64,000 nt of DNA from Octopus sinensis. Its lineage: Eukaryota. Made by a program: the position numbers and the translations under genes. Numbering within the stretch: position 1 is the first letter of the stretch; each line of letters starts with the position of its first letter. The notes under the pieces were generated by a model, which saw only the letters and a list, made by a program, of their open reading frames with translations, did not search any database and was not told the DNA's origin. Location of the stretch: NCBI RefSeq assembly GCF_006345805.1, contig NC_043004.1, positions 29,946,001-30,010,000 on the forward strand, given 5' to 3'. Shown here one piece after another: positions 1 through 62,289 of this stretch.

Positions 1-470
1 CTACAGCTGGATGCCCTTCCTAACGCCAACCACTCCGAGAGTGTAGTGGGTGATTTTATGTGCCACCGACACAGGTGCCAGACGAGGCTGGCAAACGGCC
101 ACGCTCGGATGGTGTTTTTTATGTGCCACCGACACAGGTGCCAGACGAGGCTGGCAGACGGCCACGCTCGGATGGTGTTTTTTATGTGCCACCGACACAG
201 GTGCCAGACGAGGCTGGCAGACGGCCACGCTCGGATGGTGTTTTTATGTGCCACCGACACAGGTGCCAGACGAGGCTGGCAGACGGCCACGCTCGGATGG
301 TGTTTTTATGAGGCTGGCAAACGGCCACGATCGGATGGTGCTTGTTACGTGCCCACAGCACGGAGGCCAGTCGATGCGGTACTGGCTACGGCCACGTTCG
401 GATGGTTTTCTTATGTGCCACGTGCCACAAAGATACAAATTCCATTGATGTTCATCTATTTTGATTTGTT
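1..470 (+). mobile_element. SINE-like interspersed repeat (5' part outside the window) with an internal ~62-63 bp tandem expansion (4 copies)
   Basis: The block ctacagctggatgcccttcctaacgccaaccactcc..gtgtagtgggtg recurs at ~4655, ~8328 and ~18500. The unit tgccaccgacacaggtgccagacgaggctggc starts at 61, 124, 187 and 249. Confidence 0.8.
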
Positions 471-1979: not shown

Positions 1980-3622
1980 TTTTTCCATCTAGTTTCAGCT
2001 CACGAGCTGTGGCCATGCTGGGGCACCGCCATTTGGTGTTGCTACATGATTTTACTTCACGAATGCTTTTTAGCAATTGACATTTGGTGCATGAAAGAGT
2101 TTGATGCAGCTGCCCTCATCTGCACCTCCTGCAGCGAAGTTGGTTCATCTGGGACACCTGACAGAAAGAGGTCCAGCTTTATTTTGAAGACACCTACATC
2201 TACCCCATGCAAGTCTCTCAAGTCTTTCGGGAGGATATTGAAGAGCTGTGAACCTCTGAAGCCCAGGCTATTGCAGTATCTGGTCCTACATCTTGATGGC
2301 AAATTTGGAGTCCTTGGCACTATGCAGTGGCGCCCAGTTCTAGTATTTGTGTAACTCTCAATGCCAAAGTTTGAGACAAGTCCTTCCAGAATCTTCCAGA
2401 TGTATATTATGGCATATCTTTCTTGCCTATGCTCTAAGGAATAGAGTCTTAACCTCTTGAGTCTTTCCCAATAGCTTATATGCTGCATAGAGGCTATCTT
2501 CTTTGTGTAGCTTCATTGGATTGCCTCAAGTTCTGAGATTAATTTGACATACTGGTTGGTGACCATAGCTGAGAGCAATAGTCAAAGTGGCTTAGGACAA
2601 GTGTTCTCCAGAGGACCATCATGGTTTCCTGGTCTCTTGTTCTGAAAGTTTTAAGAATCCATCCGGTCAGCTGCCTACATTTCATTGCCAATTTAGCAAC
2701 ATGCACATGAAAGGTTGCATCATTACTCATGTAAATGCCCAGGTCTCGCACTGATTGTGCCTCTGGGATTGCAATTCCTCCAGGTCCAGTGTATTTATTG
2801 GGTATTGCATTTAGTGTTGCATGCTGATAGCATAAAGCTTGAAACTTTTCAGCATTGAACTGCATGCTATTCTTTTCAGCCCACTTGTATATTTCATCCA
2901 GCTCACATTGCAGGTGCATAGTGTCTTCAGGGTTCTGTATTACCTGTGAAACTTTTGCATCATCTGCATAACTTGTTATCGTGGCTCTCTGTGTGGCTGA
3001 GGGCATGTCTGAGAGGGCCATTATGAACAGCAGTGGTTCCAAAACAGTGTCTTGCGGAACACCGCTCACTATTTGTGTGTCTTTGGAGGTGGCCCCATTG
3101 GCTACTACCACCTGACTTCTATCCTTCAGAAAGTCATGAAGCCATTCTCCCAATTTTCCAATTATGCCAAGATCATGCAGTTTGTGACATATTCCATGGT
3201 CAACTTTATCAAAGGCCTTTGCAAAGTCGAGATATATCACTTCCACAGTTGAGTGGTTGACCAGTTGTTTCAGCACCCAGTCATAGTGTTGTAAGAGCTG
3301 AGTTAGGCAGCTTCTTCCTGGTCGGAAACCATGTTGGGTGTCAGGCAGAAAGCCATTTTCTTCAAGGAAGGTGATTAGTTTCTTTCTGAATATTTGTTCC
3401 ATGACCTTGCTGATGTGTGAGGTCAGAGAGATAGGTCTGTAGTTCTTGGCCTCTGCTCTGCTACCTCCTTTATGAATAGGGCATATTTTACCCTCCTTCA
3501 GTTTTCTTGGAAGTTTGCCAGTTGCAAGGAAGCTCTGAAAGAGGAACTGCAGTGGTCTTGCTAGGATTGCTTACATACTTTTAGAAGGATTGCTGGGAAT
3601 CCATCAGGGCCAGTAGCTGTAT
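1980..3622 (-). mobile_element. 5'-truncated CR1/L2-group LINE, reverse transcriptase and C-terminal region
   Basis: ORF 2539-3402 has QHGFRPGRSCLTQLL, YLDFAKAFDKVDH, SGVPQ and YADD. Upstream in frame are GPDGIP and NYRPISLTSHISKVME. ORF 2057-2488 has LKRLRLYSLEHRQER. A stop/frameshift lies at ~2539. Confidence 0.92.
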
Positions 3623-4535: not shown

Positions 4536-5195
4536 CATCATCATCATCATCATCATTTAGCGTCCGTTTTCCATGCTAGCATGGGTTGGACGGTTCAACT
4601 GGGGTCTGTGAAGCCAGAAGGCTGCATCAGGCCCAGTCTGATCTGGCAGTGTTTCTACGGCTGGATGCCCTTCCTAACACCAACCACTCCGCGAGTGTAG
4701 TGGGTGCTTTTTACGTGCCACCTGCACAGGTGCCAGACGGTGCTGTCAAACGGCCATGAACAGATGGTGCTTTTACGTGCCACCAGCACGGGGGCCAGGC
4801 GAGGCTGGCAACGGACACGAACGGATGGTGCTTTTACGTGCCACCAGCACGGAGGCCAGTCGGGGCGTCGCTGGCAACGGCCACGAACGGATGGTGCTTT
4901 TTACGTGCCACCGGCACGGGGGCCAGGCGAGGCTGGCAATGGCCACAAACGGATGGTGCTTTTATGTGCCACCGGCACGAGGGCCAGGCGAGGCTGGCAA
5001 TGGACACGAACGGATGGTGCTTTTACGTGCCACCGGCACGGAGGCCAGTCTGGGCGGCGCTGGCAACGGCCACAATTGGATGGTTCGCTTACTTGTCACC
5101 GGCACTGGTATCACAGCCGCAATTTCCATTGATGTTGATCGACTTCGATTTTGGTTCTGCTTTCTGATATCTGATTTGATTTTGATTTGATTTTT
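4535..5195 (+). mobile_element. SINE-like repeat with an internal ~60-68 bp tandem expansion (about 6 copies), same family as 1-470
   Basis: (CAT)n start, tttagcgtccgttttccatgctagcatgggttgg block, repeated ttttacgtgccacc..acggatggtgc units, and a (TTTGA)n end. Confidence 0.8.
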
Positions 5196-5324: not shown

Positions 5325-5459
5325 AGCATATATATATATATATATACATATATATGTGTGTGTGTGTGTATATATATGTATGTATATCATCATCATCTAT
5401 ATGTATGTGTATATATATATATATGTATATGTATATATATGTATATATATATATGTATG

Positions 5460-5507
<48 letters not shown>

Positions 5508-5739
5508 TATATATGTATGTATATATATATGTATATATATATATTTATATATGTATATATATATATATTTATATATATATATGTGTGTGTCTATATGTAT
5601 ATATGTATGTTTATATATCAAAATATATATATATATATATGCATGCATATATATATATGTGTATGTATATATATATATATATGTGTATATGTATATATGT
5701 ATGTTTATATATATGTATATATATATGTTTATATATATG

Positions 5740-5780
<41 letters not shown>

Positions 5781-5916
5781 ATATATGTACATACATATAT
5801 GTGCATACATATATATGTGTGTTTATATATATGTGTGTATATATATATATATACATATATATATACATATACACATATATATATACATACATATATATGC
5901 ATACATATATATATAT
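5325..5916. repeat. Long compound (TA/TG/CA)n microsatellite; similar tracts at 25190-25410, 25960-26217, 37380-37465, 37700-37822, 58826-59115, 59386-59580, 60590-61268 and 61575-62050
   Basis: Direct inspection; these tracts are the source of the spurious IYIY ORFs. Confidence 0.97.
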
Positions 5917-13172: not shown

Positions 13173-13497
13173 TCTTTTACTCTTTTTTTACTCTTTTACT
13201 TGTTTCAGTCATTTAACTGCGACCATGCTGGAGCACCACCTTTAATCAAGCAACTCGACCCCGGAACTTATTCTTTTTGTAAGCCCAGTACTTATTCTAT
13301 CGGTCTCTTTTGCCGAACCGCTAAGTAATGGGGACATAAGCACACCAGCATCGGTTGTCAAGCAATGCTAGGGGGGACAAACACAGACACACACACATAT
13401 ATACATATATATGACGGGCTTCTTTCAGTTTCCATCTACCAAATCCACTCACAAGGCTTTGGTCGGCCCGAGGCTATAGTAGAAGACACTTGCCCAT
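13172..13497 (-). mobile_element. 5'-truncated SINE; same family on the plus strand at 50122-50490 and on the minus strand at ~51040-51130
   Basis: Shares the gggcaagtgtcttctactatagcctcgggccgaccaaagccttgtgagtggatttgg block with 50200-50270. Confidence 0.8.
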
Positions 13498-14286
13498 ATA
13501 TATATATTGTAGTTTAAGATAGGGATTCAAGGAATTGTATGGCTATCACAGAAAGTTCCTCTTACAGACTTGGCTAACTGTAATAATAGTCCAATACAGA
13601 GAAGTTTAACACAGAATGACTATACAGTTGAAATCCAGAAGATCTGATAGATGAAACTATTTCCTGAGAAGTATATAAGACATAAATAGTTAGGAGGTAT
13701 GAGAAGTGAATATATCTATTTAACTACGTGACATCTTGCAGCATTCTATATGTAATCATGATTTTAGTATGGAAGAAATTATGTATATATGTTTGCATTA
13801 AAATGTATGCTGACCATTATACAGTACAACTGTATATTCACAAATCAGTACAAATAAAGAAAGCTAGCTCAACAGATCACCAGAACATCATAGTTATATC
13901 AATAATTCAAGGATGTCAAATGATTAAATAAAGATATTCACTTCTCGTAACTCCTGACTTTTGTTTGTTTGTTTGTATGTGTGCGTGTGTGTGTGTGCAC
14001 GCGCATGTACATGTGTGTGTGTATACATGCATACATGCATCTAGCCACAGAAAACATGCCAAAGTAGATACTGGAGCATGATGCAGGCCTTTGATCCATT
14101 GCATCCTTGTGAAACTGTCCAATCTATGCCAGCTTTGAACATGGATGTTAATTATCGATGATGATATATATATCAGTGCTTCCCAACCTGTGGTCTGCAG
14201 ATCTCTGATGGTCCACAAATGTAGTACTGGGTGGTGGGGGTCTGTGAATATGTTAAGCTATTCTAGGAAATATATATATATATTAA

Positions 14287-14671
14287 AAATGGGAAAGGCT
14301 AGTTTATGGGATTACCTTGGGTTTCCAGTCCATAAAGGGTTTAGCTTTATGGCATACCTCCAGATCCCAAAAACCTGTTGGCTCAAAACCTCTTAAAAAT
14401 ATGGAGGAGGAAATGTCTCACTACTCAAAGGTAACAATTGGGGATTATCTCCCTTCGCTATCAGCTATTGGAAGTCGATACTCAGAAGTCAGTAGCTGAT
14501 AGCAAAGGGAGATAATCCCCAATTGTTACCGTTGAGTAGTGAGACATTTCCTCCTCCGTATTTTTAAGAGGTCTTGGGCCAACAGTTTTTGGGATCTGGG
14601 AGTATGCCACAAAGCATCCCTTTATGGACTGGAAACCCAAGGTAATCCCATAAACCAGCCCTCCCCATTTT
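14287..14671. repeat. Long fold-back element (~180-bp arms, 25-nt loop)
   Basis: 14287-14467 is the reverse complement of 14493-14671 with scattered substitutions. Confidence 0.95.
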
Positions 14672-14924
14672 CAATATATATTGCTCTACATCTTACAGTG
14701 TGCTTCTTTCAGATTTATGTTTTTTACAAATGATACATATACATTGCAGTAAATCCTGTTGGGATTTACTGCAATGTAATAATGGATTGGAGTTTAAATG
14801 ACCTATTATTAATTGAGCTCTTAATTACTGCAAATTTATTCTTTTGATGTTTATACAGCGATTCTCAGTAGGGATGTGTAAATGTGTATATTAATTAAAT
14901 TTTTCTTTTTTATCTTGTAGGAAA

Positions 14925-15185
14925 ATGCAGATTTTTATAATGACATGGGAAAGCCGGACTATTACTATAGAAGTTCATACTTCAGATACTATTGAAAATG
15001 TAAAAGCTAAAATTGAAAATCACCAAGGTATTCCACCAGATCAACAACATTTGCTCTATAATGGAAAAGAATTAGAAAATGACAAAACACTTTTTGACTA
15101 TGAAATTGAAAACCAGACAACACTGTACTTAGTTTACCGACTGCCAGGTGGTATGCAGATTTGTCAGAAAACTCTAATGAGCTAA
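14925..15185 (+). CDS. Diverged ubiquitin-like protein (76-aa Ub fold ending RLPGG, plus a 10-aa extension derived from a second Ub repeat)
   Basis: 46/76 identities to canonical ubiquitin by manual alignment. Polypyrimidine tract and AG acceptor at 14900-14920, 4 nt before the ATG. AATAAA at 15243-15248. The ORF is uninterrupted. Confidence 0.85.
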
Positions 15186-15869
15186 ATGTTAAAATATCAA
15201 ACAATCTAAAAGTCAAAATTCAATACAAAGAACACAAAATTCAATAAAAATATACAACATTTGATCAATTAAGCAATCAAATTAAGACGTTAGTACTTCT
15301 CTGATGTCATTTCAATTGATTGTTAATCATATAAATTTGATGAGTTTAATTAACTGTTGAAAATTAACCAAAATAAATATGTTTAAAATTAAGTACATAA
15401 ATCATAATTTGCCTTTCATTCTGGGCACTAATCTTACCTCCTGAATTTCTTGTGATAATCTTTTTGAATCTGTACTTTGTAGTTTGTCAATCTCAAAGAA
15501 GCCCTTTCCTCAACAGTCTATTCCTAATTGACTTACACTAAATATTTTATGTAGCGCATCATGTTGGATTCAAAAAAGCTAACTCGTTAGTAGTTTATCA
15601 GGCCTGACTATAAAATAGCAGTTGTTAATGATATATTTCTCCAACATGTTCCACCATAAGGCCTTGTCCTTGTATATACCAGATGCTATGTAATTTTAAT
15701 ATTACACTAGATCCAAAAAGCTAATTGGTTAGCCTTTTGAATAATTTCACCAGAAATTTCAAACAACATTTGATAAAGTGATTTGAAAAGTATTTTCTAT
15801 GTTAGATTTCTGAAAAATGTTCAGATGCAAACAGTTAAAATTCAATTTAAAATGAAAAATAGAAATAAA

Positions 15870-18379: not shown

Positions 18380-19970
18380 ATCATCATCATCATCATCATA
18401 GTTTAACATCCACTTTCCATGCTGGCATGGGTTGGACAGTTTGACTGAGGACTGGCAAGCCAGGAGGCTGCACCAGGCTCCAATCTGATCTGGCAAGATT
18501 TCTACAGTTGGATACCCTTCCTAATGACAACCACTCTGAAAGTGTAGTGGGTGCTTTTTACATTTCACCAGCACAGGGGCCAGTCAGGTGGTATTGGCAC
18601 TGATCACGCTTGAATGGTGCTTTTTACATGTCACTGGCACAGGAGCCAGTCAGGTGGCACTGGCAACAACCACACTCAAATGGTGCTTTTTACGTGCTGC
18701 TGGCATTGACCATGTTCGTATGGTGCATTTTACATACCACTGGCATGGGTACCAGTCAGGCATTAGCCACACCAATGATTTCACTTGACTCAACAGGTCT
18801 TCTCAAGCACAATACATTGCCCAATGATTGAAGGGTACTCTTAGAGCCAGTTATGTGACACTGGCATAGACAACAGTTATGTTCACTTGGCTTGCTGGAT
18901 CTTCTCAAGCACAGCCTATTTCCAAAGGTCTTGGTCATTTGTCATTGCCTCTGTGAGGCCCAAAGTTTAAAGGTTGTGCTTCACCACCTCATCCTAGGTC
19001 TTCCTGGGTATACCTCTTCCATAGGTTCCCGCCACTGTTAGGGTGTGACACTTTTTGACACAGCTGTCCTCATTCATATGCAACACATGACCATAGTAGC
19101 ACAGTTGTCTCTCTTGCACACCACACTTGATGCTTCTTATGTCCAACGTTTCTCTCAGAGTGCTTACACTCTGTCATGTATACACACTGACATTACACAT
19201 CCAGCAAAGCATACCAGCTTCATTTCTTGCAAGCTTACGCATGTCCTCAGCAGTTACAGCCTATGTTTCACTGCAGTGTAGCATGGCAGTTCGCACACAT
19301 GCCTCATACAGTCTACCTTTCACTTCCTACTTTATCTACTTGATAATACAAGTGACTCATACATATCCTACTTTGCCATAGATTTTCAGTATCTTGGCAA
19401 TTAATGTTGATGGTCCTGCTGCTTTCCTTGACTTCATCTCCTTCATAACCACTTTCAACCATCTGTCAGCCTTTATAGCAGGTTTCACAGGTAGGTTTAC
19501 TCAGTTGAGTTTACCCCTCTCTCGCCCATGACACATAGTGACATTTTCATATCAGTCTTCTTGGCTCTGGGAAGCTGAGCATTCTGCAATCATTCCATAC
19601 ACATTGTTCACGGGTTATTTTCTGATCCACACTGATTTTGCCATGTGGAATATTTCATGTTTCTGGTCCTCACAGAATAGAACATGGGTAAATTTCTTAC
19701 ATTCAGGTTCTCTCCTTGCTAGACACATTTCTACCATATGATTTCACTAACATCTCACTTTCTGCATTGTTGAAAACATGGTCCATCCACAGATCTGATT
19801 AATGACTCCTCAAGAAATTTCCAGTTGTTTTCCATGTCATGAGGCTTCTCCCCACTCAATAGAGGTGTATGTGTGTGTGCATGCGCATGTGTGTGGCGGG
19901 GGATCACCTGGTACTGCTTTAACATATTACTGAGAGACCTAGCAGCTTCCTGATCTTCCTTTTCCAGCCA
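18380..19970. mobile_element. SINE-like repeat (18380-18960) adjoining a degenerate RTE LINE fragment
   Basis: The SINE block matches 4555. 19040-19290 is similar to 10850-10980 (RTE 3' region). Confidence 0.7.
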
Positions 19971-25704: not shown

Positions 25705-26110
25705 TAATGAACTTTTTAAAAAATTCTGTTGGTTAGCTTTAGCTTTCCTCGATTTCAGCACAACATACTTCTGTAGTGGGTATAATAATATGTGGAAATT
25801 GACGATTTAAAAGTCTGTTATCAACATATTGGCATAGAAATAATTTTATTTTGCCCTTGTTTTTAAGTTGTTTATAATTTTAACCTTTAAAGGTATTTTA
25901 ATATGCTGTCACTTTTTTGATGGAATTTTTTTCTGTAAAAAACTTCATCCTCTATTAGTAGTATATATATATATATATATGTATATATATACATACATAT
26001 ACATTTATATATACATATATATACACATGTATATATATACATATATATTATATATGCATATATACATGTATATATATACATATATATGTATATATATGCA
26101 TATATACATG

Positions 26111-26169
<59 letters not shown>

Positions 26170-27358
26170 ATATATATATATATGTATATATATAACATAT
26201 ATATATGTATATATATATTTGGCTTTTGACATTCACTACTAGATTTATGTTGATTACTAAAACAATCTTCCTTTAAAAATCCATTGAGCCTGTGGTCAGC
26301 TTGTGCATATAACAAACATTTCTGTCAGGTTTGTTTTGTTTAAACGAAACATTATTTATGATGATTGAACAAGGTTTTCTAATTTAACATTGATTAGCAC
26401 TATCTGTAGAAATTCCATGGCCTAATTTATAGTAAAGAGTCAGTCATAAACATCTCCTCACTCAGTAAAAACATCCTGTGATTTCTTTCACAATCCTTTG
26501 ATGAATTCTCAGGAATTCTTGTCTATTCCCCTTAGTTATGTTTTTCCTTCAAGCCTGTTTTGTCATTCTGGCTTGAGCAAAATATTCTTGCCAATCATCA
26601 TCACTCATATTTTGCCTTCTCTTTTGATTAACAATTATTATATTTTTCCCTATTAACTTTAGCTTCATCATATGGTACCTTCCTCACACATACATATGGA
26701 CACTAATACTGTGTGCACATACAAACATATCCCTATTCTGTCACACACACAGCCAATTGTTGTCTACATGTGTGTGCCCAAATAGTGTACATATATGTAC
26801 ATGTGTCAGCAGAATTTGTTTGAACCTCTCCCTCTCTATTTCTCTCTCTCACACACATTTCGCATTCCCTTTCTTCATCATAAGAGATTTTTTACACCAC
26901 AGGAATATATTGTTAGCATTACAATAGGTAAAACTTATCTTTTTAAAATCTAACCTTTCACTCAATATCAAACTTTAAAAAAATTATTATCATCTCTGAC
27001 ATAAAAACATCACAGGGTATTGACACTTGTTATTATTGAATTTATATTTAACAAAGAAAATTCAGATTTTAACTTTATATATATGCTAAATAATGTTAAG
27101 TATTTCTCATCACTAATTCTGGTCTAAAGAAGTAGTTTCCAAAGTACTAAGCACCTTATTGTCAGGTTTCCAAGCTCCACAGTATTTGTTAGATTTGAAA
27201 ATTAATTTCAGGTAGCCATTTTTTACATACATTTGTATCCTTAGGCAAAATTTATTTATATATTCTTACAAGTACTGTAACATAACATAAATGTTAAGGA
27301 GTTAATAAATAAAGGTTCTCAGTGAACCTAATATACTGATGAACATGTACCTCTCCCC

Positions 27359-28308: not shown

Positions 28309-28732
28309 TCAGAGAATGTTATCATAATCTTCATCTGCATCCATGTCTCCTTCTAATAATTCCTCTTCTTCTTTTTCTAAACGGTCACCATCCTGACTTT
28401 CTTTTGGAGGTCTTGTAGTAGTTAATAGGCACTGTTCATCTTCTTCCTCATCTTCTTCATCATCATCACTTAAACCAATGATCTCTTGTGGTGGAGATTC
28501 ATCATATTCTTCTTCTTCTTCTTCTTCTTCTTCATCTCCATCATCGTCATCATCTGCATCTTCAGCTACCATTTCCTGGTCATTTTGGCACTTCTGGAAT
28601 GTTAGAATACAATGGTCATTGCTATCAAAAAGCTTCTGTAGATTTTTTCTTTGACGAATCCCTCTTTCCAGTCTGCGAATATCAAGAAAGTCTGGGGCTT
28701 TACAGTTGAGATCTGTTAGAATGTGGTCCCAC
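28309..28732 (-). CDS. BIVM: BIVM-like last coding exon (phase 2; [11 protein letters not shown]...acidic tail...DYDNIL*)
   Basis: Acceptor tttctctttag|G at 28733; stop at 28309-28311. Confidence 0.9.
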
Positions 28733-31700
28733 CTAAAGAGAAATGACAAAAATTCATCATCACAAAACACTTTAATTAACTTGCATAAATGTTCAAAAAT
28801 TAAAATGGTTTTATGAATTATAGAGAATCATGTGGCTAGTGTTTATTGATTCTGCTGTCTTTAGTGTTACATTGAGGAAGAACAAGACTGTTGCTATATC
28901 AGTAGCTAGTCACAAGGGGACAAATTCCAGGAAAGTTCTACTAGTTAAGAATCAATAAATGGATATAGTAAAATTGAATGTGAAAAAATAAGCAACATTT
29001 ACACATGAATAAATTCTTAATAAAGCAAACTGATAGAACTAACAAACATATTTTGTAAATATATGAAAAAATTAGATTTCTGGAATCTGAAAAAATATCA
29101 AATGAATTTTAATTGGTACTAAATAATTCTGTAATTCTTTCTATTGCAATAAATAATTAGAAATGAAAATGTTTTGTCATATTCCCATGAATTATATTAA
29201 TAATTGTGCCTTTAGTTGAAAAGGTAAAGTTCCAAACAGTCTTTACCTAAATTCAAACCATGATGAGCCTTGCCATTTTTGCAAATAAGCAGTTGTCAAA
29301 TTCCATTTCTCTTCATAGATTTCTGCTGTACACTATGCTTCAATTACCTATTATTTGCACCAATTTCACCTCCAACCAGTTCTATTTACCCTAAACATAC
29401 ACTATTATTAAATAAGAACATAAGAAAAATAACCAGGATTTAAGTGATGTAAAGCCTTTAATATGGCTTGTAATCAATATCAGTTAAAAATGACAATAAT
29501 TAAAATTGTTACTGTATAAAGTCACAACATCACTCCATATTTCTTGACCTGTTCAAATCTCTATATAGCTATCTATTCCAGTCTTGGCCCTGTCAGCTGC
29601 ATTAAATTTTTTTATTTCCTGGTCTTATGTCATTCAAAGATGACAACAAATTAATTGCCTGCTGAAAAATCTTAGAAGTCAGATTTTAGCAAAGAAGCTT
29701 AGTCATTGCAGTCTTTTAGGAAAGAAAAGTAATCGAGGAAATAAAATGTTATGTTTTATGAATGAGATTGAGGCTGTAGAGAATAAGTGTATTTTTATTA
29801 AAAGGTAAACTGAGCGGTGTGTAGTGTATGTTAACACAATAATCATTGCAAAGATAAATTATAAAAATAATGAGTTACTTACTTCTTACACTGTAAACTG
29901 GGGTATTTGCTGCTGGTGTCTCCCAAAATAATCCATGTCTCTAGGTCACCAGAACATAAATCAGACCTAAAATAAAAATAATAAAAATAATAATAATAAT
30001 GATGATGATGATGATGATGAATGCCCTGATGCAGTACCAGGCAGTGGCTTTCATGGTTTCTGATCTTAACCGATTGAAAGTGATATCATGTACATTTTTC
30101 TTTTGTCTAGGTATAAAAGATGGGCTACGGCAAATATTCTGTTCAATACCACAGATTTGCTTGTCATTTGTTTGACCTTAACCAGTTGAGCATGTCCCTT
30201 AGTGGCTGACGATATGTGCTTCTCTGATCACGAGCAGAAGTAGTGGGGGAGCATCATAGCCATGTGTTGAGAAGGATTCTTTGGGGTTTGAATAATTCAC
30301 CTCTGGAAACATGGGTGTTTTGTTCAACGTCCTTAAACAACCCTTATTCAGGGACCTTTTGAGTGGGATGGGCTACTTAGCTGAATAAAATTCTAACTGG
30401 GCTCCACCTGCAAGGTCATGTGCTGTTTATCTTGATATGAGATCACCATGTTGTGCACATATGGTTGTGATGCATGTGCCTGGTGTACCCTTATCAGACG
30501 GGTAGTCATGATGGGTATACTGGGCTTCGTATATTTTACCCCAGTGTCACTTTGATGGCATGCTCTGCTCGCTCACTCAATAATAATAATAATAATAATA
30601 ATGACGACGATGATGACGACAATAAACACGACGACGACGAGGATAAATGCCCTGATGCAGTACCAGGCAGTGGCTTTCATGGTTTCTGATCTTAACTGAT
30701 TGAAAGTGATATCATGTACATTTTTTTTTTATCTAGGTATAAAAGATGGGCTACGGCAAATATTCTGTTCAATACCACAGATTTGCTTGTCATTTGTTTG
30801 ACCATAACCAGTTGAGCATGTCCCTTAGTGACAGACGATATGTGCTTCTCTGATCATGAGCAGAAGTAGTGGGGGAGCATCATAGCCATGTGTTGAGATG
30901 AATTCTTTGGAGTTAGAATAATTCACCTCTGGGAACATGGGTGTTTCATTCAACATCCTTAAACAACCCTTATTCAGGGACCTTTTGAGTGGGATGGGCT
31001 ACTTAGCTGAATAAAATTCTAACTGGGCTCCACCTGCAAGGTCATGTGCTGTTTACCTTGATTAGATACTGATATATTAGTGATGAGTCATACTTCAATG
31101 GGTTTACAGCAATTTTTGCACTTTGTAAGGTGGCTAGCATTAGGAAAGGCATCCATCTATAGAAACCATGTCAAAGCTGACATTCAACTTTGATGCTGTT
31201 CTTTGGCTTCTTAGATCCCATTGAACTGTCCAACCAATGCCACTATCAAAGAAGGATGTTAAATGATGGTGATGATTATTACACAATGATTATTACACAA
31301 CCTTTCTAATTCAATAGTTTGAATAATTGGAAATATGACATGCAGAGTTATGATTCAAGAAGTTTCAACTTCTAATAAAATATACTTAGTCTGCATACTG
31401 AGTACTTTTTCTCTAGTTTGTAAACAAAAGTTTATGAATCCATACACATATGTATGAACATATTTCTTTCCAGCCTCATGGTTTTCTGCTTAGTCCTACT
31501 GTGTGGCACCTAGGGAAAGAGTTTTCTACTTTGGTCCCAAGCTAACCAAAGCCTTGTGAGTGGATGTACACACACACACACAAATGGGCTGAGGTTCACT
31601 ACAGCTGTTTCAGACATGTTTTTTTATTGATGAACACATCAGTTACATAATTGTAATTGATTTGTTCATCAAAACAAAAACATGTCTGAAACAGCTGTAG

Positions 31701-50900: not shown

Positions 50901-52020
50901 GATATACATAGATATATTTAGTTTAACTGTGAGACATAAACTACACAACAGACTTGGTCCGATCTCAGAATATTGCCAAAATTGTAATATTAAATTTGGA
51001 TTCCGTAATTTCTTTAAATATATTTAGACATATTGAGACACAGGTGTGACTGTGTAGTTAAGAGACTTGCTTTACAGCCATGTAGTTTTGGGTTCAGTCC
51101 CACTGTGCAACACCTTGGGCAAGTGTCTTCTACTTTAGCCCTGGGCTCTGTGTGTGTATGTGTGTGCACGCATATGCACACATGCATGTATGTGTTTGTA
51201 CTGTGCAAGCTTGTCTCCACATAATGTGATATTGTAAATGAACACCACTGTCATCCAAGTGATGTTGTTTGTTCTCAGTCTTCCAGTGGAAAACAAGTTG
51301 GCAAAGGGAAATAATAATAACTTGCTTGGAAACAAGTGAGGATTGGTAACAGGAAGGGCATCCAACCATAAAAATTCTGCCTCAAGAATTTTGTCCGACT
51401 CACGCAGGCATAGAAAAGTAGATGTTAAAATGATGATGTTGATGATATTTAAACATACTAACTGTAATGTGTGTTACATTTGTCATTGTTCATTTTTATG
51501 TCTTGGATGAAGATTTAATTGTTTCAGTCATTGAACTGTGACCATGCTGGGGCACTACCTTGAAGGGTTTAGTCAAACAATACTGCCTTCATCAGTTAAT
51601 TTTAGGTTCGGTACTTATTTTATAGTCTCTTTGGTTGAACCACTAAGTTATAGGGATATGATCAAACCAACTCTGGATGTCAAATGGTGGTGGTGGTGGT
51701 GGCAGTGGGGAACAAATGCAACGACACACACATTATGGTCCTGATAAGGTAGAAAGTTGGAGTGTTGTTTCGTCCCTGTATAAGCAACATACAACAATTA
51801 ACCATTGCACAATATAAAAGCACACATTTTGATGCAAGTCTTTGCCACTCTAATGTATAAAAAGTACTTTTACATAATACCTTGGTTATGTAAAGTATTG
51901 TGTAACTTTCCATATGAAAATTTTGCATGCAATGACATTAAAAACAGGATGGTACTGAAATAATTTTAACTGGTAATTAAAGATGTGCCAGATTCTTTCT
52001 TTGTCTTTTTTTATCATGAT

Positions 52021-56000: not shown

Positions 56001-58619
56001 GTCATTAAATCAAGTACATTACATAAAATTAAGTACATTTATAGTGTTAGGTTTTTGTGAGGTCAATTTTAACATTTGAACAAGTATAAATAAACTAAAT
56101 ATTAATAATCAATAGGGGTTTATTTAATTTAGTTGATTACACCAGTCAGTGAAGAATACAAGGCTTTCTGTTTAGTCAAACAACAATTGTTACAAGAAGA
56201 TGTTTTGAAAAGTTGACCACTAATAATGTTATTTAAGCAACATGAAACCTCTATTGTTACTTACATCTGTGTGTGTAACTGCAAACTAACATATTGCTAG
56301 TTAGCTACATCATCTGCCTATACACATCACAATGTGTATTTATTTTTGGAAATCTAGATTGCTAGTTACCTGTATCCCCTATCTACACATGTCATAATAT
56401 GTATATCTGCACATCACCTCCATACACACCACAATGCATGTGTCTGTTTGCAGAGAAATACATTGATATAGTTAGCTATATCAGTATCGCTACACTCACA
56501 TCATAATGTGTATAATAACTAACTGTAGTTAGCTAGCTACATTACCTACCTACACTAACGTCAAACAATGTCGGTATACTTTAGAAATTCAATCAAGAAA
56601 TCATGTTTAAGCTATAAAGTATTGAATAATCACCCAACAGAAATATTTCTGTTTTCTGCTATAAAAGCCACAACAGTTACTAGCACATCATTCCACTTGA
56701 TAGATATAGTAGCTAAATTTCCCTAAAATGATGCTCTCTAATCTTAAAACTGGATGGACATTGGACATGGTCATCTAATACAAATCCTAAAAAGGTAGGG
56801 TGGTCATGGATTTTCATTCTAGGTTAGGTGTGACCTGGGCTGACCTGGGACTAATCAATGATACCCACCGAAACATAAATATTAACCTCACACACTGCCA
56901 TCACTTGCAGCTAAGTTTACTGATTTTACACAGTTAAGACTCAACTGTAAAACTCTACTGAAGGGAAATGGAATGTACTTAAATTTATATCTATTTTATA
57001 GGTTAGACATAGTAATTAGGGAACATTCATGACAATTTTTAGGGCTTCCAAAACTGATAGCAGGTAATGAAGAAGTTATTTTGAGAGGTAACATTGACCT
57101 AAATGCTTGCAACAGAAAGCATCTGCTAAAGACATCCAAGCATCAAGAAAGAGCCAGTGTTGAACTGAATGATGGATTAAAGGTCAGCAGGTTGTGTTAA
57201 ACTGGAGAATGGATTAGGGGCCAGTTGATAGTGGAGAGACGAGAGAAAGATAGGGGGAGTTACCTCCCGCTTTTATGCTAATTTTTGCTGTCATATTTTC
57301 ATTTCTAACTCAATCCATTCACATACACTGTCTTCCTCTCCCACACATATACTTTACCCTCCCCCACATAGACACTCTTTACCCTTTCCTGGAAGTATTT
57401 TGAAAAAAATTAGTTAATTTTTGAGCTGGATGTTTGGATGTAATTATTTGATATATTAGAAGAGTTGAAAGTCAATAAATAGAACAGGCATTACTCTTAT
57501 ATCAAAAAGTGTAGCAGACACTATTTATAAATATATAATCAAAGTAGATATTGCTTATAAATAAGCATTCATATATTACTTATAGATTAACAAATACATC
57601 AAACATTACCTTTAAAGACAACAAGTCTATAACATATAGCAAATAGACCAAACATTTACTTTTAAAGATCAGAAGTAGATCAGACATTACTTATAAAACA
57701 ATATATAGAGTTGCTTATGAAGACAATGAGCCAAAGAGGGAACCTCTACATAGTTGCTCAACCTGCAACAAGTAGTAGCCAAACTGCTTTTAATCACACA
57801 CAATCATCTTAAAAAAAAAGTAAGAAAACAATTAATAGTGTAGTCTTAGATATTACAGAGTCTGAAAATAAGATGTATTATGTCTGCTTTATCTCTGACT
57901 ATAGGTCTGCTTGGTCAAAGCTGATATTGGGTTAAACAACAAAATAAATACAGCAGATGTTACTTACAGGCAGGAGAAGCCATATTCTGTAACTGTAGAC
58001 GTAAAGTTAATGAGAGCGCCGACTGGTAATCCTGGCCACCATCAGAGATATGTGACAACAATTCTTCGACTTGAGCTATCAAATTGGCTAATACTTCAAC
58101 AGGAACACAATCAGCAGAATGTTGGCTAGTCTCTAGACTTGCATCAGTTTGGGTTGATCCATCTACCCATGACGTATTCAACAAATTGAGATGTTTTATT
58201 TCAATTTGTTTAGTCTTTAACAATTTACGTTCACGAATTGAACGTAATGTTTCAGCTAAGAGTTCATGTGAACTGCTGCTGGTATCTTCATCATCACCAT
58301 CTTCATCCTCTTCTTCTTCATCTTCTTCTTCCTCCTCTTCAGCTTCAGCGTTCGAGTCAACGTAAGCCAGTTGACTCTTGTCTGCTTCTTCAGCATCATA
58401 GAAGACATCTTCACCTGAGTCAAAGTCATCATCAATATCACATTCAGTTTCTTTGTGGACAACAGGTTGTAAGGTGTTCTCCCCTAATTTGACTTCAGTT
58501 GCTGTTGGAGTTTCATCTCCATCAGTTGACTTTGTAGCAGCAAAAGTCTCCTTACAGTTGTTGGAACATTCATCATTGATACCTTCTGATGCTGGGTCCT
58601 TGTCCACCTTGTTTCCCAT
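28309..58619 (-). CDS. BIVM: BIVM-family (basic immunoglobulin-like variable motif) protein, 8 coding exons, 1857 nt = 618 aa plus stop
   Basis: The spliced product contains [51 protein letters not shown] and [22 protein letters not shown], matching recalled vertebrate BIVM motifs. All introns are GT-AG with matching phases. Confidence 0.9.
29883..29966 (-). CDS. BIVM: BIVM-like exon (84 nt; [27 protein letters not shown])
   Basis: ttttattttag|G ... AA|gtaagt; phase 2 to 2. Confidence 0.9.
30010..31062 (+). repeat. Tandem duplication of a retroelement-tail repeat (full copy ~30010-30578 with AAT tail; truncated copy ~30646-31062)
   Basis: Two nearly identical copies of aatgccctgatgcagtaccaggcagtggctttcatgg..., about 625 bp apart. 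Confidence 0.9.
31588..31711. repeat. Near-perfect 124-nt hairpin in a BIVM intron
   Basis: gctgaggttcactacagctgtttcagacatgttttt..ttaca TAAT tgtaa..aaaaacatgtctgaaacagctgtagtgaacctcagc. Confidence 0.95.
32611..32835 (-). CDS. BIVM: BIVM-like exon (225 nt; [11 protein letters not shown]...[28 protein letters not shown])
   Basis: tttttatttcag|A ... TC|gtaagt; phase 2 to 2. Confidence 0.9.
34318..34422 (-). CDS. BIVM: BIVM-like exon (105 nt; [35 protein letters not shown])
   Basis: cttttatttcag|C ... AA|gtaagt; phase 2 to 2; matches PITQEEALHILGFQPPF. Confidence 0.88.
34621..36800 (-). mobile_element. Internally deleted Helitron derived from an autonomous element (5' end approximate)
   Basis: 3' end aacccaggtaacgtcagatatttctgCTAG|t. 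Coding remnants: [60 protein letters not shown], then [11 protein letters not shown] and [10 protein letters not shown]. Confidence 0.88.
37503..37701. repeat. Near-perfect fold-back (~95-bp arms, short A-rich loop)
   Basis: atatagaaaatagtaaagagtg..tgtctgaagaatatt / aatattcttcagaca..cactctttactattttctatat. Confidence 0.95.
37825..38708. mobile_element. Mariner-derived non-autonomous element with ~220-bp inverted ends
   Basis: TA|cgaagtctgatcaataagtatc ... gatacttattgatcagaccacg|TA. Internal [29 protein letters not shown] on plus and [12 protein letters not shown] on minus. Confidence 0.88.
40985..41080 (-). CDS. BIVM: BIVM-like exon (96 nt; [31 protein letters not shown])
   Basis: ctttgtctatcaaacag|G ... 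AA|gtaggt; phase 2 to 2. Confidence 0.92.
41400..42450 (-). mobile_element. Head-to-tail array of about 5 copies of a tRNA-derived SINE with (ATT)n tails; further copies at 44440-45065 (3), 46170-46430 and 49120-49325, and in opposite orientation at ~7170-7365 and ~8480-8620
   Basis: Repeated ggtttcaaatttt..ggtacttattttat(t/c)gacc..aaggatgaaaggcaaagt..gaatttgaactcagaa units separated by (AAT)n. Confidence 0.85.
42718..43034. repeat. Inverted repeat (~90-bp arms, ~130-bp spacer)
   Basis: ttattggttgaacaatatttcgacagcaagcctgtctttgttgagttcaaaataaaaagtgat and its reverse complement at ~42955-43020. Confidence 0.92.
46600..49050 (+). pseudogene. Heavily degraded Helitron Rep/helicase coding remnant
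   Basis: Ordered motif remnants: [73 protein letters not shown], then a GDF helicase motif near 48940. Confidence 0.65.
49620..49725 (-). CDS. BIVM: BIVM-like exon (106 nt; [35 protein letters not shown])
   Basis: cttttcttttcgtag|T ... TG|gtgagt; phase 1 to 2; matches RKVLDLRRW. Confidence 0.9.
50122..50490 (+). mobile_element. Full-length tRNA-derived SINE
   Basis: Head ggtgcaggtgtagctgtgtggtaagaagcc..gggttcagtgcc; body as at 13172-13497. Confidence 0.8.
52088..52428 (-). mobile_element. Young tRNA-derived SINE with a CORE-like central block
   Basis: Minus-strand head gaagtggaTGGCTCAGTGGttagagcg..GCTCGAATCCcgg; gtgttctcgagcaaggcactttatttcacgttgctccagttcactcagctg; CpGs largely retained. 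Confidence 0.8.
52571..52735 (-). CDS. BIVM: BIVM-like exon (165 nt; [12 protein letters not shown]...[18 protein letters not shown])
   Basis: tatctctatgtgcag|TG ... C|gtatgc; phase 1 to 1. Confidence 0.82.
55153..55746. mobile_element. hAT (Charlie/Buster-type) MITE
   Basis: TIRs cagtggttctcaaact / agtttgagaaccacaa; 8-bp TSD gtatagtc (55145-55152) and gtatagta (55747-55754). Confidence 0.88.
57968..58619 (-). CDS. BIVM: BIVM-like first coding exon (acidic, probably disordered N-terminus; exon acceptor at 58626)
   Basis: ctctattttgttag|GCTATAATG ... T|gtaagt; open 652 nt; phase 1 matches the next exon. Confidence 0.8.
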
Positions 58620-59221
58620 TATAGCCTAACAAAATAGAGAGAAATAGAATGCTGAAATTTGTAGATTATTGTATGTATGACGAAAGACAAGGTTAGAGAA
58701 AAAAATCAAAGATTATAATAAAATACCATCATACTACAATGTAAAACATGATTAATAAAAATAATAGGAGATATAACAAAACTGGAACCCCACTTGCTGT
58801 AAAATGGTACCATCACTTATATTCTTATATATATATATACACACACACATATATACATACATATATATATATATATATACATACATACATATATATGCAC
58901 ATATACAAATGTATTCATATATAATGTATATGTAATATATATATATATATATAATATATCAATATATATGTATATATATATATGTATACATATGTGTATA
59001 CATATATATGTATATATATGTGTATATATATATGTATGTATACATATATATGTATATATATATGTATGTATATATAAATGTATATGTATGTGTGTGTATA
59101 TATATATATATATATAATTAATAATAATAATATTAGGGAGTAAATCCAAACTTACAGGGAAAAATTAGATTTAGGATTAAATCTAATTTTAAAGTATAAA
59201 TATATATATATATATTTATAT

Positions 59222-60583: not shown

Positions 60584-60815
60584 TTATATATATATATTAT
60601 ATACAGATACATATGTACACATATATATATGTATATATACATATGCATATAAATATATATATACATACACACACATATATATACATATATATATACATAC
60701 ACACACACACATATATATACATATATATATACATACACACACACACATATATACATATATATATACATACACACACACACATATTATACATATATATATA
60801 CATACACACACACAC

Positions 60816-60851
<36 letters not shown>

Positions 60852-60925
60852 TATATATACATATATATACATACACACACACACATATATATACATATAT
60901 ATATACATACACACACACAATATAC

Positions 60926-60956
<31 letters not shown>

Positions 60957-61020
60957 TATATATATATAATACACACATATATATATATATATATACCAAT
61001 ATACATACATAATATACACC

Positions 61021-61055
<35 letters not shown>

Positions 61056-61105
61056 TATATATATATATATATACATATATATACATATATATATATATAT
61101 ATAAT

Positions 61106-61150
<45 letters not shown>

Positions 61151-61171
61151 TATATATATATATATATACAC

Positions 61172-61250
<79 letters not shown>

Positions 61251-61449
61251 TATATATATATTATATATACATTGTGGTGTGTGTAGGAGGTGATGTGCAG
61301 GTATACACATCGTTTTGGGATCTCCACTACTTTATTATCTCCCTTTCTTCTTAGCTCTCCTGTGTGACCCCTCCGTCCAGCATTTGCCATGATAGATTGC
61401 TAGCCACTAAAGCTTTTTCTTTTTTCTCTCCCTGTTTATTTCTGTGTTC

Positions 61450-61488: not shown

Positions 61489-61758
61489 TTCTCACTTTCC
61501 GAGTGTTAAACTAATACATCTGTTTGTTGTTTACGCACCCGTCTTCATTTTTTGTTTTTTTGTAAATTCTCACTATATACATATATACATACATATATAC
61601 ACTTACATATATATATATACATATATACATATATACACATACATTTACATATGCATATATTTATATACATATATATACATATTTATATACATATACATAT
61701 ATATATACATATACATATATTTATATACATATCTATATACATATACATATATATATAT

Positions 61759-61789
<31 letters not shown>

Positions 61790-61953
61790 CACGCACACAT
61801 ATATATATATATACATATAAACATATACATGTTTGACTAAAATGTGGTGCTCCAGGATGGCCATAGTCAAATGACTAAAACAATATAAGGAATGTATATA
61901 TATATACATATATACCTATACACATATATACACACACACACACACATATATAA

Positions 61954-62007
<54 letters not shown>

Positions 62008-62289
62008 TATATATATATATATATACACATATACATATACATAAATTATATATATATTTACTTTGATATTTCCATTTGTGATACTTAATGTAATTAATAT
62101 TTTTAACAAGAGAAAAAAACTCATTATTTGATTATCACAGTTTATGTGAAGATCTTTTCATAATCTTAAGGAAGGTACTTTAATCATCAGAAAGTAAAAT
62201 CATTCTTAGTAAATTATTATTAGCATATAAAACATCAATAACGAAAATGAATTAAGATACACATTGAAATCATTTTTATCAAGCAAAAA

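What the first reader, a model, noticed from the sequence alone, without database searches (positions are those of the whole stretch)
14925..15185. Diverged ubiquitin with rewired surface and RLPGG end: candidate lineage-specific modifier
Ubiquitin is normally almost invariant, but this intact ORF is only ~60% identical. K6, K11, K33 and K63 are lost (M, R, H, N), while K27, K29 and K48 are kept and K54 is new. The hydrophobic patch is altered (L8W, I44L, H68Y, R42H). R72 and the di-Gly are kept, but R74 is Pro. The structural core ([17 protein letters not shown]) is conserved, and there are no stops or frameshifts in the 76-aa unit although the following repeat is wrecked. This pattern fits purifying selection on fold with changed partners. 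A UTR-intron acceptor and AATAAA flank it as in real polyubiquitin genes. It could be a new UBL, a DUB-resistant or decoy ubiquitin, or a young pseudogene.
Basis: partly seen in the sequence, partly recalled or inferred. Interest (0 to 1): 0.72.

Follow-up and report, generated by a model that had tools for sequence, protein, structure and literature searches.

The report
Diverged single-unit ubiquitin gene in Octopus
This is an intact but heavily diverged ubiquitin copy, the last surviving unit of a decayed polyubiquitin-type gene found so far only in Octopus; selection kept it for a long time, but it now evolves almost freely and nothing shows it is expressed.

Summary
Window 14925-15185 (+) is an 86-codon ORF: a 76-residue ubiquitin unit, 46/76 identical to ubiquitin and ending RLPGG, then [10 protein letters not shown]-stop, the stump of a second head-to-tail unit.

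The window is about 99.5% identical to Octopus vulgaris chromosome OX597821.1. The ORF is annotated there (CAI9726747.1) and has an 86-aa, 87%-identical orthologue with the same stop in O. bimaculoides (A0A0L8GD74). No other protein among 5.8 billion clusters shares its distinctive words.

A young pseudogene is unlikely:
- The joint chance of no stop and no frameshift at 30 neutral replacements is about 1e-3.
- The replacements are more conservative than neutral ones (P=0.001), and none is radical in the core.
- The predicted fold is ubiquitin's (TM 0.95).
- The adjacent second unit has decayed almost beyond recognition.

Recent constraint is weak. There are 11 replacements between the two species against a published 7.6% genome divergence, so omega is about 0.8 (0.4-1.4). 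Seven of the nine replacements within the unit hit residues that had stayed ubiquitin-like.

Expression is untested, because the gene models may rest on homology or ab initio prediction. It is best read as an old, Octopus-restricted ubiquitin paralogue under relaxed selection. A modifier role is unproven.

The parts
14900..14920 (+). Pyrimidine tract (14900-14916) and AG (14919-14920): candidate 3' splice site four bases upstream of the ATG. The exon would start at G 14921.
   Evidence: Sequence. The O. vulgaris model CAI9726747.1 (MKQNLPWK+ORF) joins a 23-nt first coding exon (L001 10001-10023, outside the window) to this site. No transcript evidence was available here.
14925..15152 (+). Ubiquitin-like unit 1: 76 codons, intact, ending YRLPGG.
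   Evidence: 46/76 identical to ubiquitin. PF00240 at 3.4e-24. AF2 pLDDT above 89 over residues 1-70 with a beta-grasp fold. Foldseek TM 0.95 to ubiquitin. GC 33%, GC3 22%.
15153..15185 (+). In-frame stump of unit 2 ([10 protein letters not shown]) and the TAA stop at 15183-15185. It would be a 10-residue C-terminal extension of the precursor.
   Evidence: 6/8 identical to MQIFVKTL. The same length and stop occur in O. bimaculoides (MKISQKTLMS). Predicted disordered.
15186..15340 (+). Decayed remainder of unit 2, with frameshifts, stops and a net deletion of about 18-22 nt.
   Evidence: NLKVKIQYKE at 15203-15232. Direct repeat 15254-15284 versus 15044-15074, 74% identical, spacing 210. Three-frame translation. 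As a whole it is not significant against shuffles, so the outer limits are approximate.
15243..15248 (+). AATAAA hexamer 58 nt after the stop: a possible poly(A) signal. A second copy lies at 15372-15377.
   Evidence: The hexamer occurs 101 times on the + strand of the window, 1.6 per kb, so its presence is weak evidence.

Best explanation
This is an old ubiquitin paralogue, found so far only in Octopus, that arose by DNA-level duplication of a polyubiquitin-type gene.

Origin (shown). The copy keeps an acceptor a few bases before the ATG and the head-to-tail junction GG|MQI. All units but the first were lost, and the second is now a 10-codon stump plus debris.

History (shown or inferred from sequence statistics). 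For most of its history, selection kept the first unit as a folded beta-grasp protein with Met1, K27/K29/K48, R72 and Gly-Gly. Its interaction surfaces drifted or were remodelled: L8W, R42H, I44L, H68Y, L71Y, R74P, and loss of K6, K11, K33 and K63. Since the O. vulgaris / O. bimaculoides split it has evolved at close to the genomic background rate, while staying open in both species. That means relaxed selection.

Mechanism if it is expressed (inferred, not shown):
- An 86-residue precursor would need a hydrolase to remove [10 protein letters not shown] and expose G76.
- R72 points to a ubiquitin-type E1. R42H, L8W and L71Y should weaken charging by that E1. The altered Ile44 patch should weaken recognition by standard ubiquitin receptors, and P74 should weaken handling by many DUBs.
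- The product could not replace ubiquitin. At best it would be a low-abundance variant modifier or a free ubiquitin-fold binder, comparable in kind to the ubiquitin variants encoded by human UBBP4.
For: - Identity and fold.
- Polyubiquitin origin: in-frame MQICQKTL after GG, colinear remnants, and an acceptor used by the O. vulgaris model. A snail ubiquitin gene also has an acceptor-like cag four bases before its first ATG.
- Long-term selection on the reading frame: P(no stop at 30 neutral replacements)=0.085; the joint chance with no frameshift is 1.2e-3 at an indel/substitution ratio of 0.1.
- Long-term selection on chemistry: mean BLOSUM62 of the replacements is +0.50 against -0.44±0.29 for neutral ones (P=0.001); 15 positive against 9.4 expected (P=0.018); 0 radical changes among 14 aliphatic core residues (P=0.043).
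- The neighbouring unit 2 has decayed almost to noise.
- An orthologue with the same 86-codon frame exists in O. bimaculoides. The split is put at about 34 My (PMC10700109). P(both intact under neutrality)=0.014-0.073.
- Age: dN from ubiquitin is 0.27, about 240 My at the neutral rate.
Against: - My proxy for omega since the species split is 0.78 (95% CI 0.39-1.39). It uses the published 7.6% genome divergence (PMC6472339) in place of dS, so neutrality is not rejected.
- Seven of the nine recent replacements within the unit fall on residues that were still ubiquitin-like: E24G, A28S, P38T, Q40H and D58A in O. bimaculoides; Q31E and D52N in O. vulgaris.
- Recent replacements are not more conservative than random (P=0.19).
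- GC3 is 22%, fully equilibrated to the AT-rich background.
- No expression or peptide evidence. The O. vulgaris model is CDS-only, and its pipeline used aligned O. bimaculoides UniProt proteins and Augustus, so it may be circular.
- No orthologue beyond Octopus was found among 5.8 billion protein clusters, although how well that collection covers other cephalopods is unknown.
- Ubiquitin pseudogenes are abundant (PMC7066184), so a look-elsewhere effect applies.
Confidence: 0.55

Rival explanations
1. It is now a dead relic. It was once a functional diverged ubiquitin gene, lost its function around or before the O. vulgaris / O. bimaculoides split, and has stayed open in both species by chance. 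The gene models would then be annotation artefacts carried over by homology.
For: - Omega about 0.78, with a CI that includes 1.
- Recent changes hit ubiquitin-invariant residues E24, P38, Q40 and D58 and are chemically random.
- The model is CDS-only, with a 23-nt first exon 16-21 kb away beside a dispersed repeat.
- The annotation pipeline used the O. bimaculoides proteome and ab initio predictors.
- No Logan or other transcript-derived protein with this sequence is on record.
- GC3 is 22%.
Against: Under neutrality at the published divergence, both species should keep an open 86-codon frame only 1.4-7% of the time. The start codon, acceptor AG, GG and stop position are all kept. Omega below 1 is also compatible with the data.
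Confidence: 0.33
2. It never had a function of its own. It is a polyubiquitin pseudogene that drifted neutrally from canonical ubiquitin and kept one open unit by chance: the reader's pseudogene option in its pure form.
For: Ubiquitin pseudogenes are among the most abundant pseudogene families (PMC7066184). The scan selects for open frames. The composition matches the background.
Against: - The joint probability of no stop and no frameshift at this divergence is about 1e-3 (1e-2 to 2e-5, depending on the indel rate).
- Independently, the replacements are too conservative (P=0.001) and spare the core (P=0.043).
- The adjacent unit shows what neutral decay over the same period looks like.
- dN of 0.27 would need about 240 My of neutral drift.
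Confidence: 0.05
3. It is a functional, conjugatable, lineage-specific modifier or a DUB-resistant or decoy ubiquitin under positive or diversifying selection. On this reading the high omega reflects adaptation rather than relaxation.
For: - GG, R72, K48 and Met1 are retained.
- 18 of the 30 changes lie in the three surface regions that engineered ubiquitin variants diversify (region limits from my own knowledge).
- The large dN needs either great age or an accelerated phase.
- There is precedent: UbKEKS is conjugated to distinct targets (PMC7066184).
Against: The enrichment in binding-surface regions is not significant (P=0.10). Recent changes lie mainly on the helix and the 'tolerant' face, not on the binding patches. 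No E1, DUB or expression data exist. R42H, L8W and L71Y are expected to impair E1 charging (established ubiquitin biochemistry, from my own knowledge).
Confidence: 0.07

Closest known systems
Canonical ubiquitin / polyubiquitin genes (UBB/UBC type)
   Same: Beta-grasp fold (TM 0.95). MQIF start. K27, K29, K48, R72, L73 and G75-G76 kept. Head-to-tail junction GG|MQI. An acceptor a few bases before the ATG. The best PDB sequence and fold matches are all ubiquitin.
   Different: 30 of 76 residues differ, whereas ubiquitin is nearly invariant across eukaryotes. Four of the seven lysines are lost. The Leu8-Ile44 patch, His68, Leu71, Arg42 and Arg74 are changed. Only one unit survives. It is AT-equilibrated (GC3 22%).
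Ubiquitin variants encoded by UBB pseudogene 4 (UbKEKS; Dubois et al. 2020, PMC7066184)
   Same: A ubiquitin-derived locus that looks like a pseudogene yet encodes an intact GG-ended variant with an altered set of lysines. The proposed outcome is also similar: low abundance and non-degradative modification.
   Different: UbKEKS differs from ubiquitin at 4 positions; this protein differs at 30. UbKEKS has RNA, peptide, conjugation and knockout evidence; this one has none. The two arose independently, in human and in Octopus.
NEDD8 (a ubiquitin-like modifier about 58% identical to ubiquitin)
   Same: A similar distance from ubiquitin. It shares Tyr45 and Lys54 with this protein. It ends in GG behind a short C-terminal extension that a hydrolase removes.
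   Different: Only 30/76 identical to this protein. NEDD8 has Ala72, the determinant that excludes it from the ubiquitin E1 (my own knowledge), while this protein keeps Arg72. NEDD8 is universal and strongly conserved.
Engineered ubiquitin variants (UbVs) that bind DUBs and E3s
   Same: Substitutions cluster at residues 2-14, 42-49 and 62-74 (18 of 30). UbV complexes are among the structural matches (5hpt, 5hpl, 4i6l).
   Different: UbVs are selected in vitro for tight binding. Here the clustering is not significant (P=0.10), and no partner is known.
Virus-encoded ubiquitins (for example baculovirus v-ubi)
   Same: Diverged single-unit ubiquitins with a GG end and a short tail.
   Different: Nothing in the surroundings looks viral. 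The second-unit stump, the intron acceptor and the syntenic orthologue in a second Octopus species point to a host polyubiquitin origin.

Membership tests
Ubiquitin family (Pfam PF00240, beta-grasp) | Significant match to the family profile over the whole domain | tested here: met
   84.8 bits against a cut-off of 25.4, residues 3-73 on profile positions 1-71 of 72.
Ubiquitin family (Pfam PF00240, beta-grasp) | Beta-beta-alpha-beta-beta...beta grasp fold | tested here: met
   Prediction only. AF2 mean pLDDT 86 (above 89 for residues 1-70), with E2-6, E12-16, H23-34, E41-45 and E66-71. Foldseek TM 0.95 and rmsd about 1 Å to ubiquitin.
Canonical ubiquitin (functional equivalent) | Near-invariant sequence | tested here: not met
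   46/76 identical.
Canonical ubiquitin (functional equivalent) | Seven acceptor lysines (K6, K11, K27, K29, K33, K48, K63) | tested here: not met
   K6M, K11R, K33H and K63N. K27, K29 and K48 are kept, and K54 is new.
Canonical ubiquitin (functional equivalent) | Leu8-Ile44-His68-Val70 recognition patch and the LRLRGG tail | tested here: not met
   W8, L44, Y68 and V70; the tail is YRLPGG.
Polyubiquitin-type gene | Head-to-tail units with no spacer | tested here: inconclusive
   There is one intact unit and then an in-frame stump of a second ([10 protein letters not shown]-stop) with decayed remnants. This is ancestry, not the present architecture.
Conjugatable ubiquitin-like modifier | A C-terminal Gly-Gly that processing can expose | tested here: met
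   At sequence level only: G75-G76 followed by a 10-residue, predicted-disordered extension. Cleavage was not tested.
Conjugatable ubiquitin-like modifier | Activation by an E1 and covalent conjugates in vivo | not testable with these tools
   Needs biochemistry or proteomics. R72 is kept, but R42H, L8W and L71Y argue for poor UBA1 charging (inference from known ubiquitin-E1 contacts).
Conjugatable ubiquitin-like modifier | Expression of the gene | not testable with these tools
   No read data were available. The exact-product look-up found only the genome annotation. The annotation pipeline could have produced the model from homology or ab initio.
Pseudogene | Disabling mutations in the reading frame | tested here: not met
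   Unit 1 has none, in O. vulgaris-type sequence (two assemblies) or in O. bimaculoides. Unit 2 is disabled.
Pseudogene | Neutral rate of protein change (dN/dS about 1) | tested here: inconclusive
   Since the species split the proxy omega is 0.78, CI 0.39-1.39. The long-term pattern is clearly non-neutral. A true dS needs O. bimaculoides DNA, which I could not retrieve.

The most novel reading that the evidence does not exclude
Octopuses have a private ubiquitin-like modifier. It would be charged through Arg72 by a ubiquitin-type E1. Its Trp8/Leu44/Tyr68/Tyr71 face and Pro74 tail would redirect it to different readers and make its conjugates resistant to standard DUBs. It could form only K27, K29 or K48 links. 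It would have arisen through an early burst of adaptive change in a polyubiquitin duplicate, and it would leave a diagnostic Lys-LPGG remnant (+324.18 Da) instead of Lys-GG after trypsin.
Probability: 0.1. Interest if true: 0.65.

Novelty: new member of a known kind. Interest (0 to 1): 0.3.

Why it matters
Ubiquitin is among the most conserved eukaryotic proteins. Natural copies that keep the fold and the Gly-Gly end while their recognition surfaces change are therefore natural experiments on what the conjugation machinery tolerates. The human UBBP4 case showed that such 'pseudogene-like' copies can be real modifiers. If this octopus copy is expressed, it would be a far more diverged example, with a built-in mass-spectrometry signature (an LPGG remnant). 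If it is not expressed, it is a well-dated example of how slowly a small, robust fold loses its reading frame. As the evidence stands, it is an already annotated but uncharacterised ubiquitin-like ORF of modest interest.

Tried and rejected
- Exact-product look-ups of the 86-aa ORF and of the O. bimaculoides protein found no contig. I therefore had no O. bimaculoides DNA and could not compute a true dN/dS.
- A word-masked profile search, with the ubiquitin-conserved middle replaced by X to keep ordinary ubiquitins out, returned only the two Octopus proteins. The 90% clusters of both hold one member each.
- A degenerate-codon scan of metagenome contigs for residues 5-19 found nothing.
- Full-text search for accession A0A0L8GD74 found nothing, and a search for octopus plus polyubiquitin found nothing about this gene.
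- I tried to show that the whole second unit is statistically detectable. A frameshift-aware protein-to-DNA alignment scored 33 against 27±4 for shuffles. A DNA alignment beyond the first 30 nt was reached by 76 of 500 shuffles. Neither is significant, so only the stump and two short colinear pieces count.
- AATAAA as evidence for a real 3' end: rejected as weak, at 1.6 per kb.
- Enrichment of the changes in UbV-type binding regions is not significant (P=0.10).
- A processed retrocopy is unlikely, because an acceptor sits where polyubiquitin genes have their 5'-UTR intron. A viral or transposon-borne ubiquitin is also unlikely, because the flanks show nothing viral and the locus is syntenic in a second species.
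- No tRNA was found beside the annotated exon 1.

Full report
**What is in the sequence**

Window 14925-15185 (+) is an ATG-initiated ORF of 86 codons ending in TAA. Its first 76 residues align with ubiquitin without gaps: 46/76 identical, 61/76 positives, E=3e-35. They match Pfam PF00240 over the whole domain (3.4e-24). tblastn finds no other ubiquitin unit in the window, or in the 41-kb reference locus L001, which covers window ~490-25200 and reaches about 11.7 kb beyond the window's upstream end.

- K6M, K11R, K33H and K63N.
- K27, K29 and K48 kept, and R54K.
- L8W, R42H, I44L and H68Y.
- R72 and G75-G76 kept, and R74P.

V70 is kept.

**Where it comes from**

The best protein hit is a 94-aa Octopus vulgaris protein (CAI9726747.1 / A0AA36B4E1) that consists of MKQNLPWK plus this ORF. 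Its gene lies on chromosome OX597821.1 at 44.67-44.72 Mb of assembly GCA_951406725.2.

The window is colinear with that locus but not identical: 120 mismatches and 60 gap openings in 24.3 kb, and one 4.6-kb insertion difference. It therefore comes from another O. vulgaris assembly or individual, or from a very close relative. Within the ORF the two differ by one synonymous base (Y71, TAC/TAT).

A second hit is an 86-aa Octopus bimaculoides protein (A0A0L8GD74), 87% identical and with the same length and stop.

I also searched with the ubiquitin-conserved middle masked, so that only proteins sharing the distinctive words could be candidates. That search returned only these two proteins out of 5.8 billion clusters. 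No other annotated orthologue or paralogue is on record there. How well that collection covers other cephalopod proteomes is unknown.

**Gene anatomy**

Four bases before the ATG lies a pyrimidine tract followed by AG (14900-14920). The O. vulgaris model uses it as the acceptor for a 23-nt first coding exon that lies outside the window, 16-21 kb upstream.

That model is CDS-only: it runs exactly from ATG to stop. The published pipeline aligned the UniProt O. bimaculoides proteome to the genome and ran Augustus and GeneMark (PMC10700109). The model is therefore not evidence of transcription. A dispersed SINE-like repeat starts about 20 nt after the annotated exon 1.

Directly after G76 the frame continues with [10 protein letters not shown]-stop, which is 6/8 identical to the start of a ubiquitin unit. 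Downstream, in other frames, there are two further remnants:
- NLKVKIQYKE at 15203-15232, matching Ub residues 25-34 (7/10).
- A 31-nt direct repeat of unit 1, 15254-15284 versus 15044-15074, 74% identical. The spacing is 210 nt instead of 228.

Apart from these pieces, the second unit cannot be told from shuffled sequence. The remnant shares the CAACAT (Gln41-His42) of unit 1. Either R42H predates the loss of unit 2, or a CpG codon changed twice in parallel.

AATAAA at 15243-15248 is not informative, because the hexamer occurs 1.6 times per kb.

The locus is thus a DNA-level derivative of a polyubiquitin-type gene that has kept one unit. In a land-snail ubiquitin locus fetched for comparison, the first unit also has an acceptor-like cag four bases before its ATG. 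This is weak support for a conserved 5'-UTR intron position.

**Is the intact unit more than chance?**

I simulated neutral, AT-biased substitution from a parsimonious ubiquitin-coding ancestor until 30 residues had changed.
- Only 8.5% of runs were free of stops, after a mean of 52 substitutions.
- With an indel/substitution ratio of 0.05, 0.1 or 0.2, the joint probability of an undisturbed frame is 1e-2, 1.2e-3 or 2e-5.
- Locally, the ratio of gap openings to mismatches between the two assemblies is 0.5. Microsatellites inflate that figure.

Independently, the 30 replacements are more conservative than stop-free neutral ones:
- Mean BLOSUM62 is +0.50 against -0.44±0.29 (P=0.001).
- 15 are positive against 9.4 expected (P=0.018).
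- The 14 aliphatic core positions show only V5I and L15I, with no radical change (P=0.043).

AlphaFold2 predicts a confident beta-grasp for residues 1-72 (block pLDDT 89-97) and a disordered tail. The model superposes on ubiquitin with TM 0.95 and rmsd about 1 Å.

Even allowing for many ubiquitin pseudogenes per genome (PMC7066184), drift alone does not explain the unit. It was kept as a folded protein for most of its divergence.

That divergence is large. At least 37 nonsynonymous changes in 163 sites give dN=0.27. The local neutral rate follows from two published figures: 7.6% genome divergence (PMC6472339) and a 34-My split (PMC10700109). At that rate, dN=0.27 needs about 240 My. So 'young pseudogene' does not fit. 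Either the gene is much older than the genus Octopus, or it went through an accelerated phase.

**Is it still constrained?**

I could not obtain O. bimaculoides DNA, so I used the published whole-genome divergence as a stand-in for dS.

The two orthologues differ at 9 of 76 unit residues and 2 of 10 tail residues. All are single-base changes. With 185.8 nonsynonymous sites, 14.1 replacements are expected under neutrality and 11 are seen. That gives omega of about 0.78 (95% CI 0.39-1.39; P(≤11)=0.25). If the true neutral divergence is 10-15%, omega falls to 0.6-0.4.

Polarised with ubiquitin, seven of the nine unit changes hit residues that had stayed ubiquitin-like until the split:
- E24G, A28S, P38T, Q40H and D58A in O. 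bimaculoides.
- Q31E and D52N in the O. vulgaris lineage.

The distribution does not differ from uniform (Fisher P=0.47). The recent replacements are no more conservative than random (P=0.19).

The only positive sign of present constraint is that the 86-codon frame is open in both species. Under neutrality that has probability 0.014-0.073. I read this as relaxed purifying selection. Recent loss of function is a serious alternative.

**What it would do**

This part is inference from established ubiquitin biochemistry.
- Translation from the ATG at 14925 gives an 86-residue precursor. A hydrolase must remove the 10-residue tail to expose G76.
- Arg72 is the determinant that directs ubiquitin, rather than NEDD8, to the ubiquitin E1, and it is kept. 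Arg42, Leu8 and Leu71, which also contact the E1, are changed.
- The Leu8-Ile44-His68 patch used by most ubiquitin receptors, and by the proteasome pathway, is altered.
- Pro74 replaces a tail arginine that many DUBs read.
- Only K27, K29 and K48, plus a new K54 and Met1, remain as possible linkage sites.

The protein cannot stand in for ubiquitin. At most it is a low-abundance variant modifier with different readers, or a free ubiquitin-fold binder. None of this has been tested.

**Comparison with known systems**

It is a member of the ubiquitin family by profile and by predicted fold. It fails every test for canonical ubiquitin.
- It is closer to ubiquitin (46/76) than to NEDD8 (30/76).
- The nearest functional analogue is the set of ubiquitin variants encoded by human UBBP4 (UbKEKS). 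These come from a locus annotated as a pseudogene, are conjugated to distinct targets and are non-degradative (PMC7066184). UbKEKS differs from ubiquitin at four residues and has experimental support. This protein differs at thirty and has none.
- Eighteen of the thirty changes fall in the three regions that engineered ubiquitin variants diversify, but this is not significant (P=0.10).

**Verdict**

- Historical selection on the fold with a remodelled surface: yes.
- A young pseudogene: no.
- A currently functional modifier or decoy: unproven, with near-neutral recent evolution.

The protein is already in public databases as an uncharacterised ubiquitin-like protein. I rate it a new member of a known kind, of modest interest. 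The decisive data are transcript mapping, codon models across octopod genomes, and a proteomic search for its peptides and Lys-LPGG remnants.

Noticed in passing
window 14276-14681: A near-perfect 406-nt palindrome: arms 14367-14470 / 14490-14593 are 92% complementary, and outer arms 14276-14339 / 14618-14681 are 94%. It lies 244 nt upstream of the ORF's ATG, inside the annotated intron. It is probably a foldback or MITE-like element.
   Followed up: partly
L001 24095-28734 (absent from the window between 12943 and 12944): A 4.6-kb insertion in the O. vulgaris reference assembly that the window lacks. It carries an uninterrupted 1045-aa ORF with endonuclease (Exo_endo_phos), reverse transcriptase (RVT_1, 1e-29) and a weak PHD match. 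This looks like a young, possibly active LINE that is polymorphic between the two sequences.
   Followed up: partly
window 2057-3402 (-): A fragment of a non-LTR retrotransposon: a 287-aa ORF with RVT_1 (7e-19), followed by a 143-aa C-terminal ORF.
   Followed up: partly
window 54-307, 4703-5105, 18550-18693: Related GC-rich minisatellites of 61-66 nt units (GGTGCTTTTTACGTGCCACCGGCACAGG...), in 2-5.5 copies each. They produce spurious 130-145-aa ORFs.
   Followed up: no
window 5328-5916, 25962-26218, 58826-59116, 60585-61269, 61574-62057: Very long degenerate (TA)n / (TATG)n tracts, up to about 690 nt. They create many 'YIYIYI' ORFs and account for the low-GC bins of the window.
   Followed up: no
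window 57960-58619 (-) and 28309-28770 (-): Two ORFs (219 and 153 aa) with long acidic Glu/Asp runs and otherwise complex sequence, with no Pfam match. They may be coding exons of real genes on the minus strand.
   Followed up: no
L001 10045-10204; window 51047-51134, 31463-31564, 13349-13460: A dispersed SINE-like repeat. One copy begins about 20 nt after the 23-nt first coding exon of the O. vulgaris gene model, which adds to the doubt about that exon. No tRNA was detected there.
   Followed up: partly
L002 3001-3228, 5385-5612, 7612-7837 (Bradybaena similaris AP039604.1): In this land snail, ubiquitin units lie about 2.3 kb apart. Each is preceded by ...acag and followed by GT: GGAG|GTATGT, with ...acag|GT before the second and third units completing the Gly76 codon. 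Single units therefore seem to be separate exons. That would be an unusual polyubiquitin architecture. The third unit has a frameshift.
   Followed up: no
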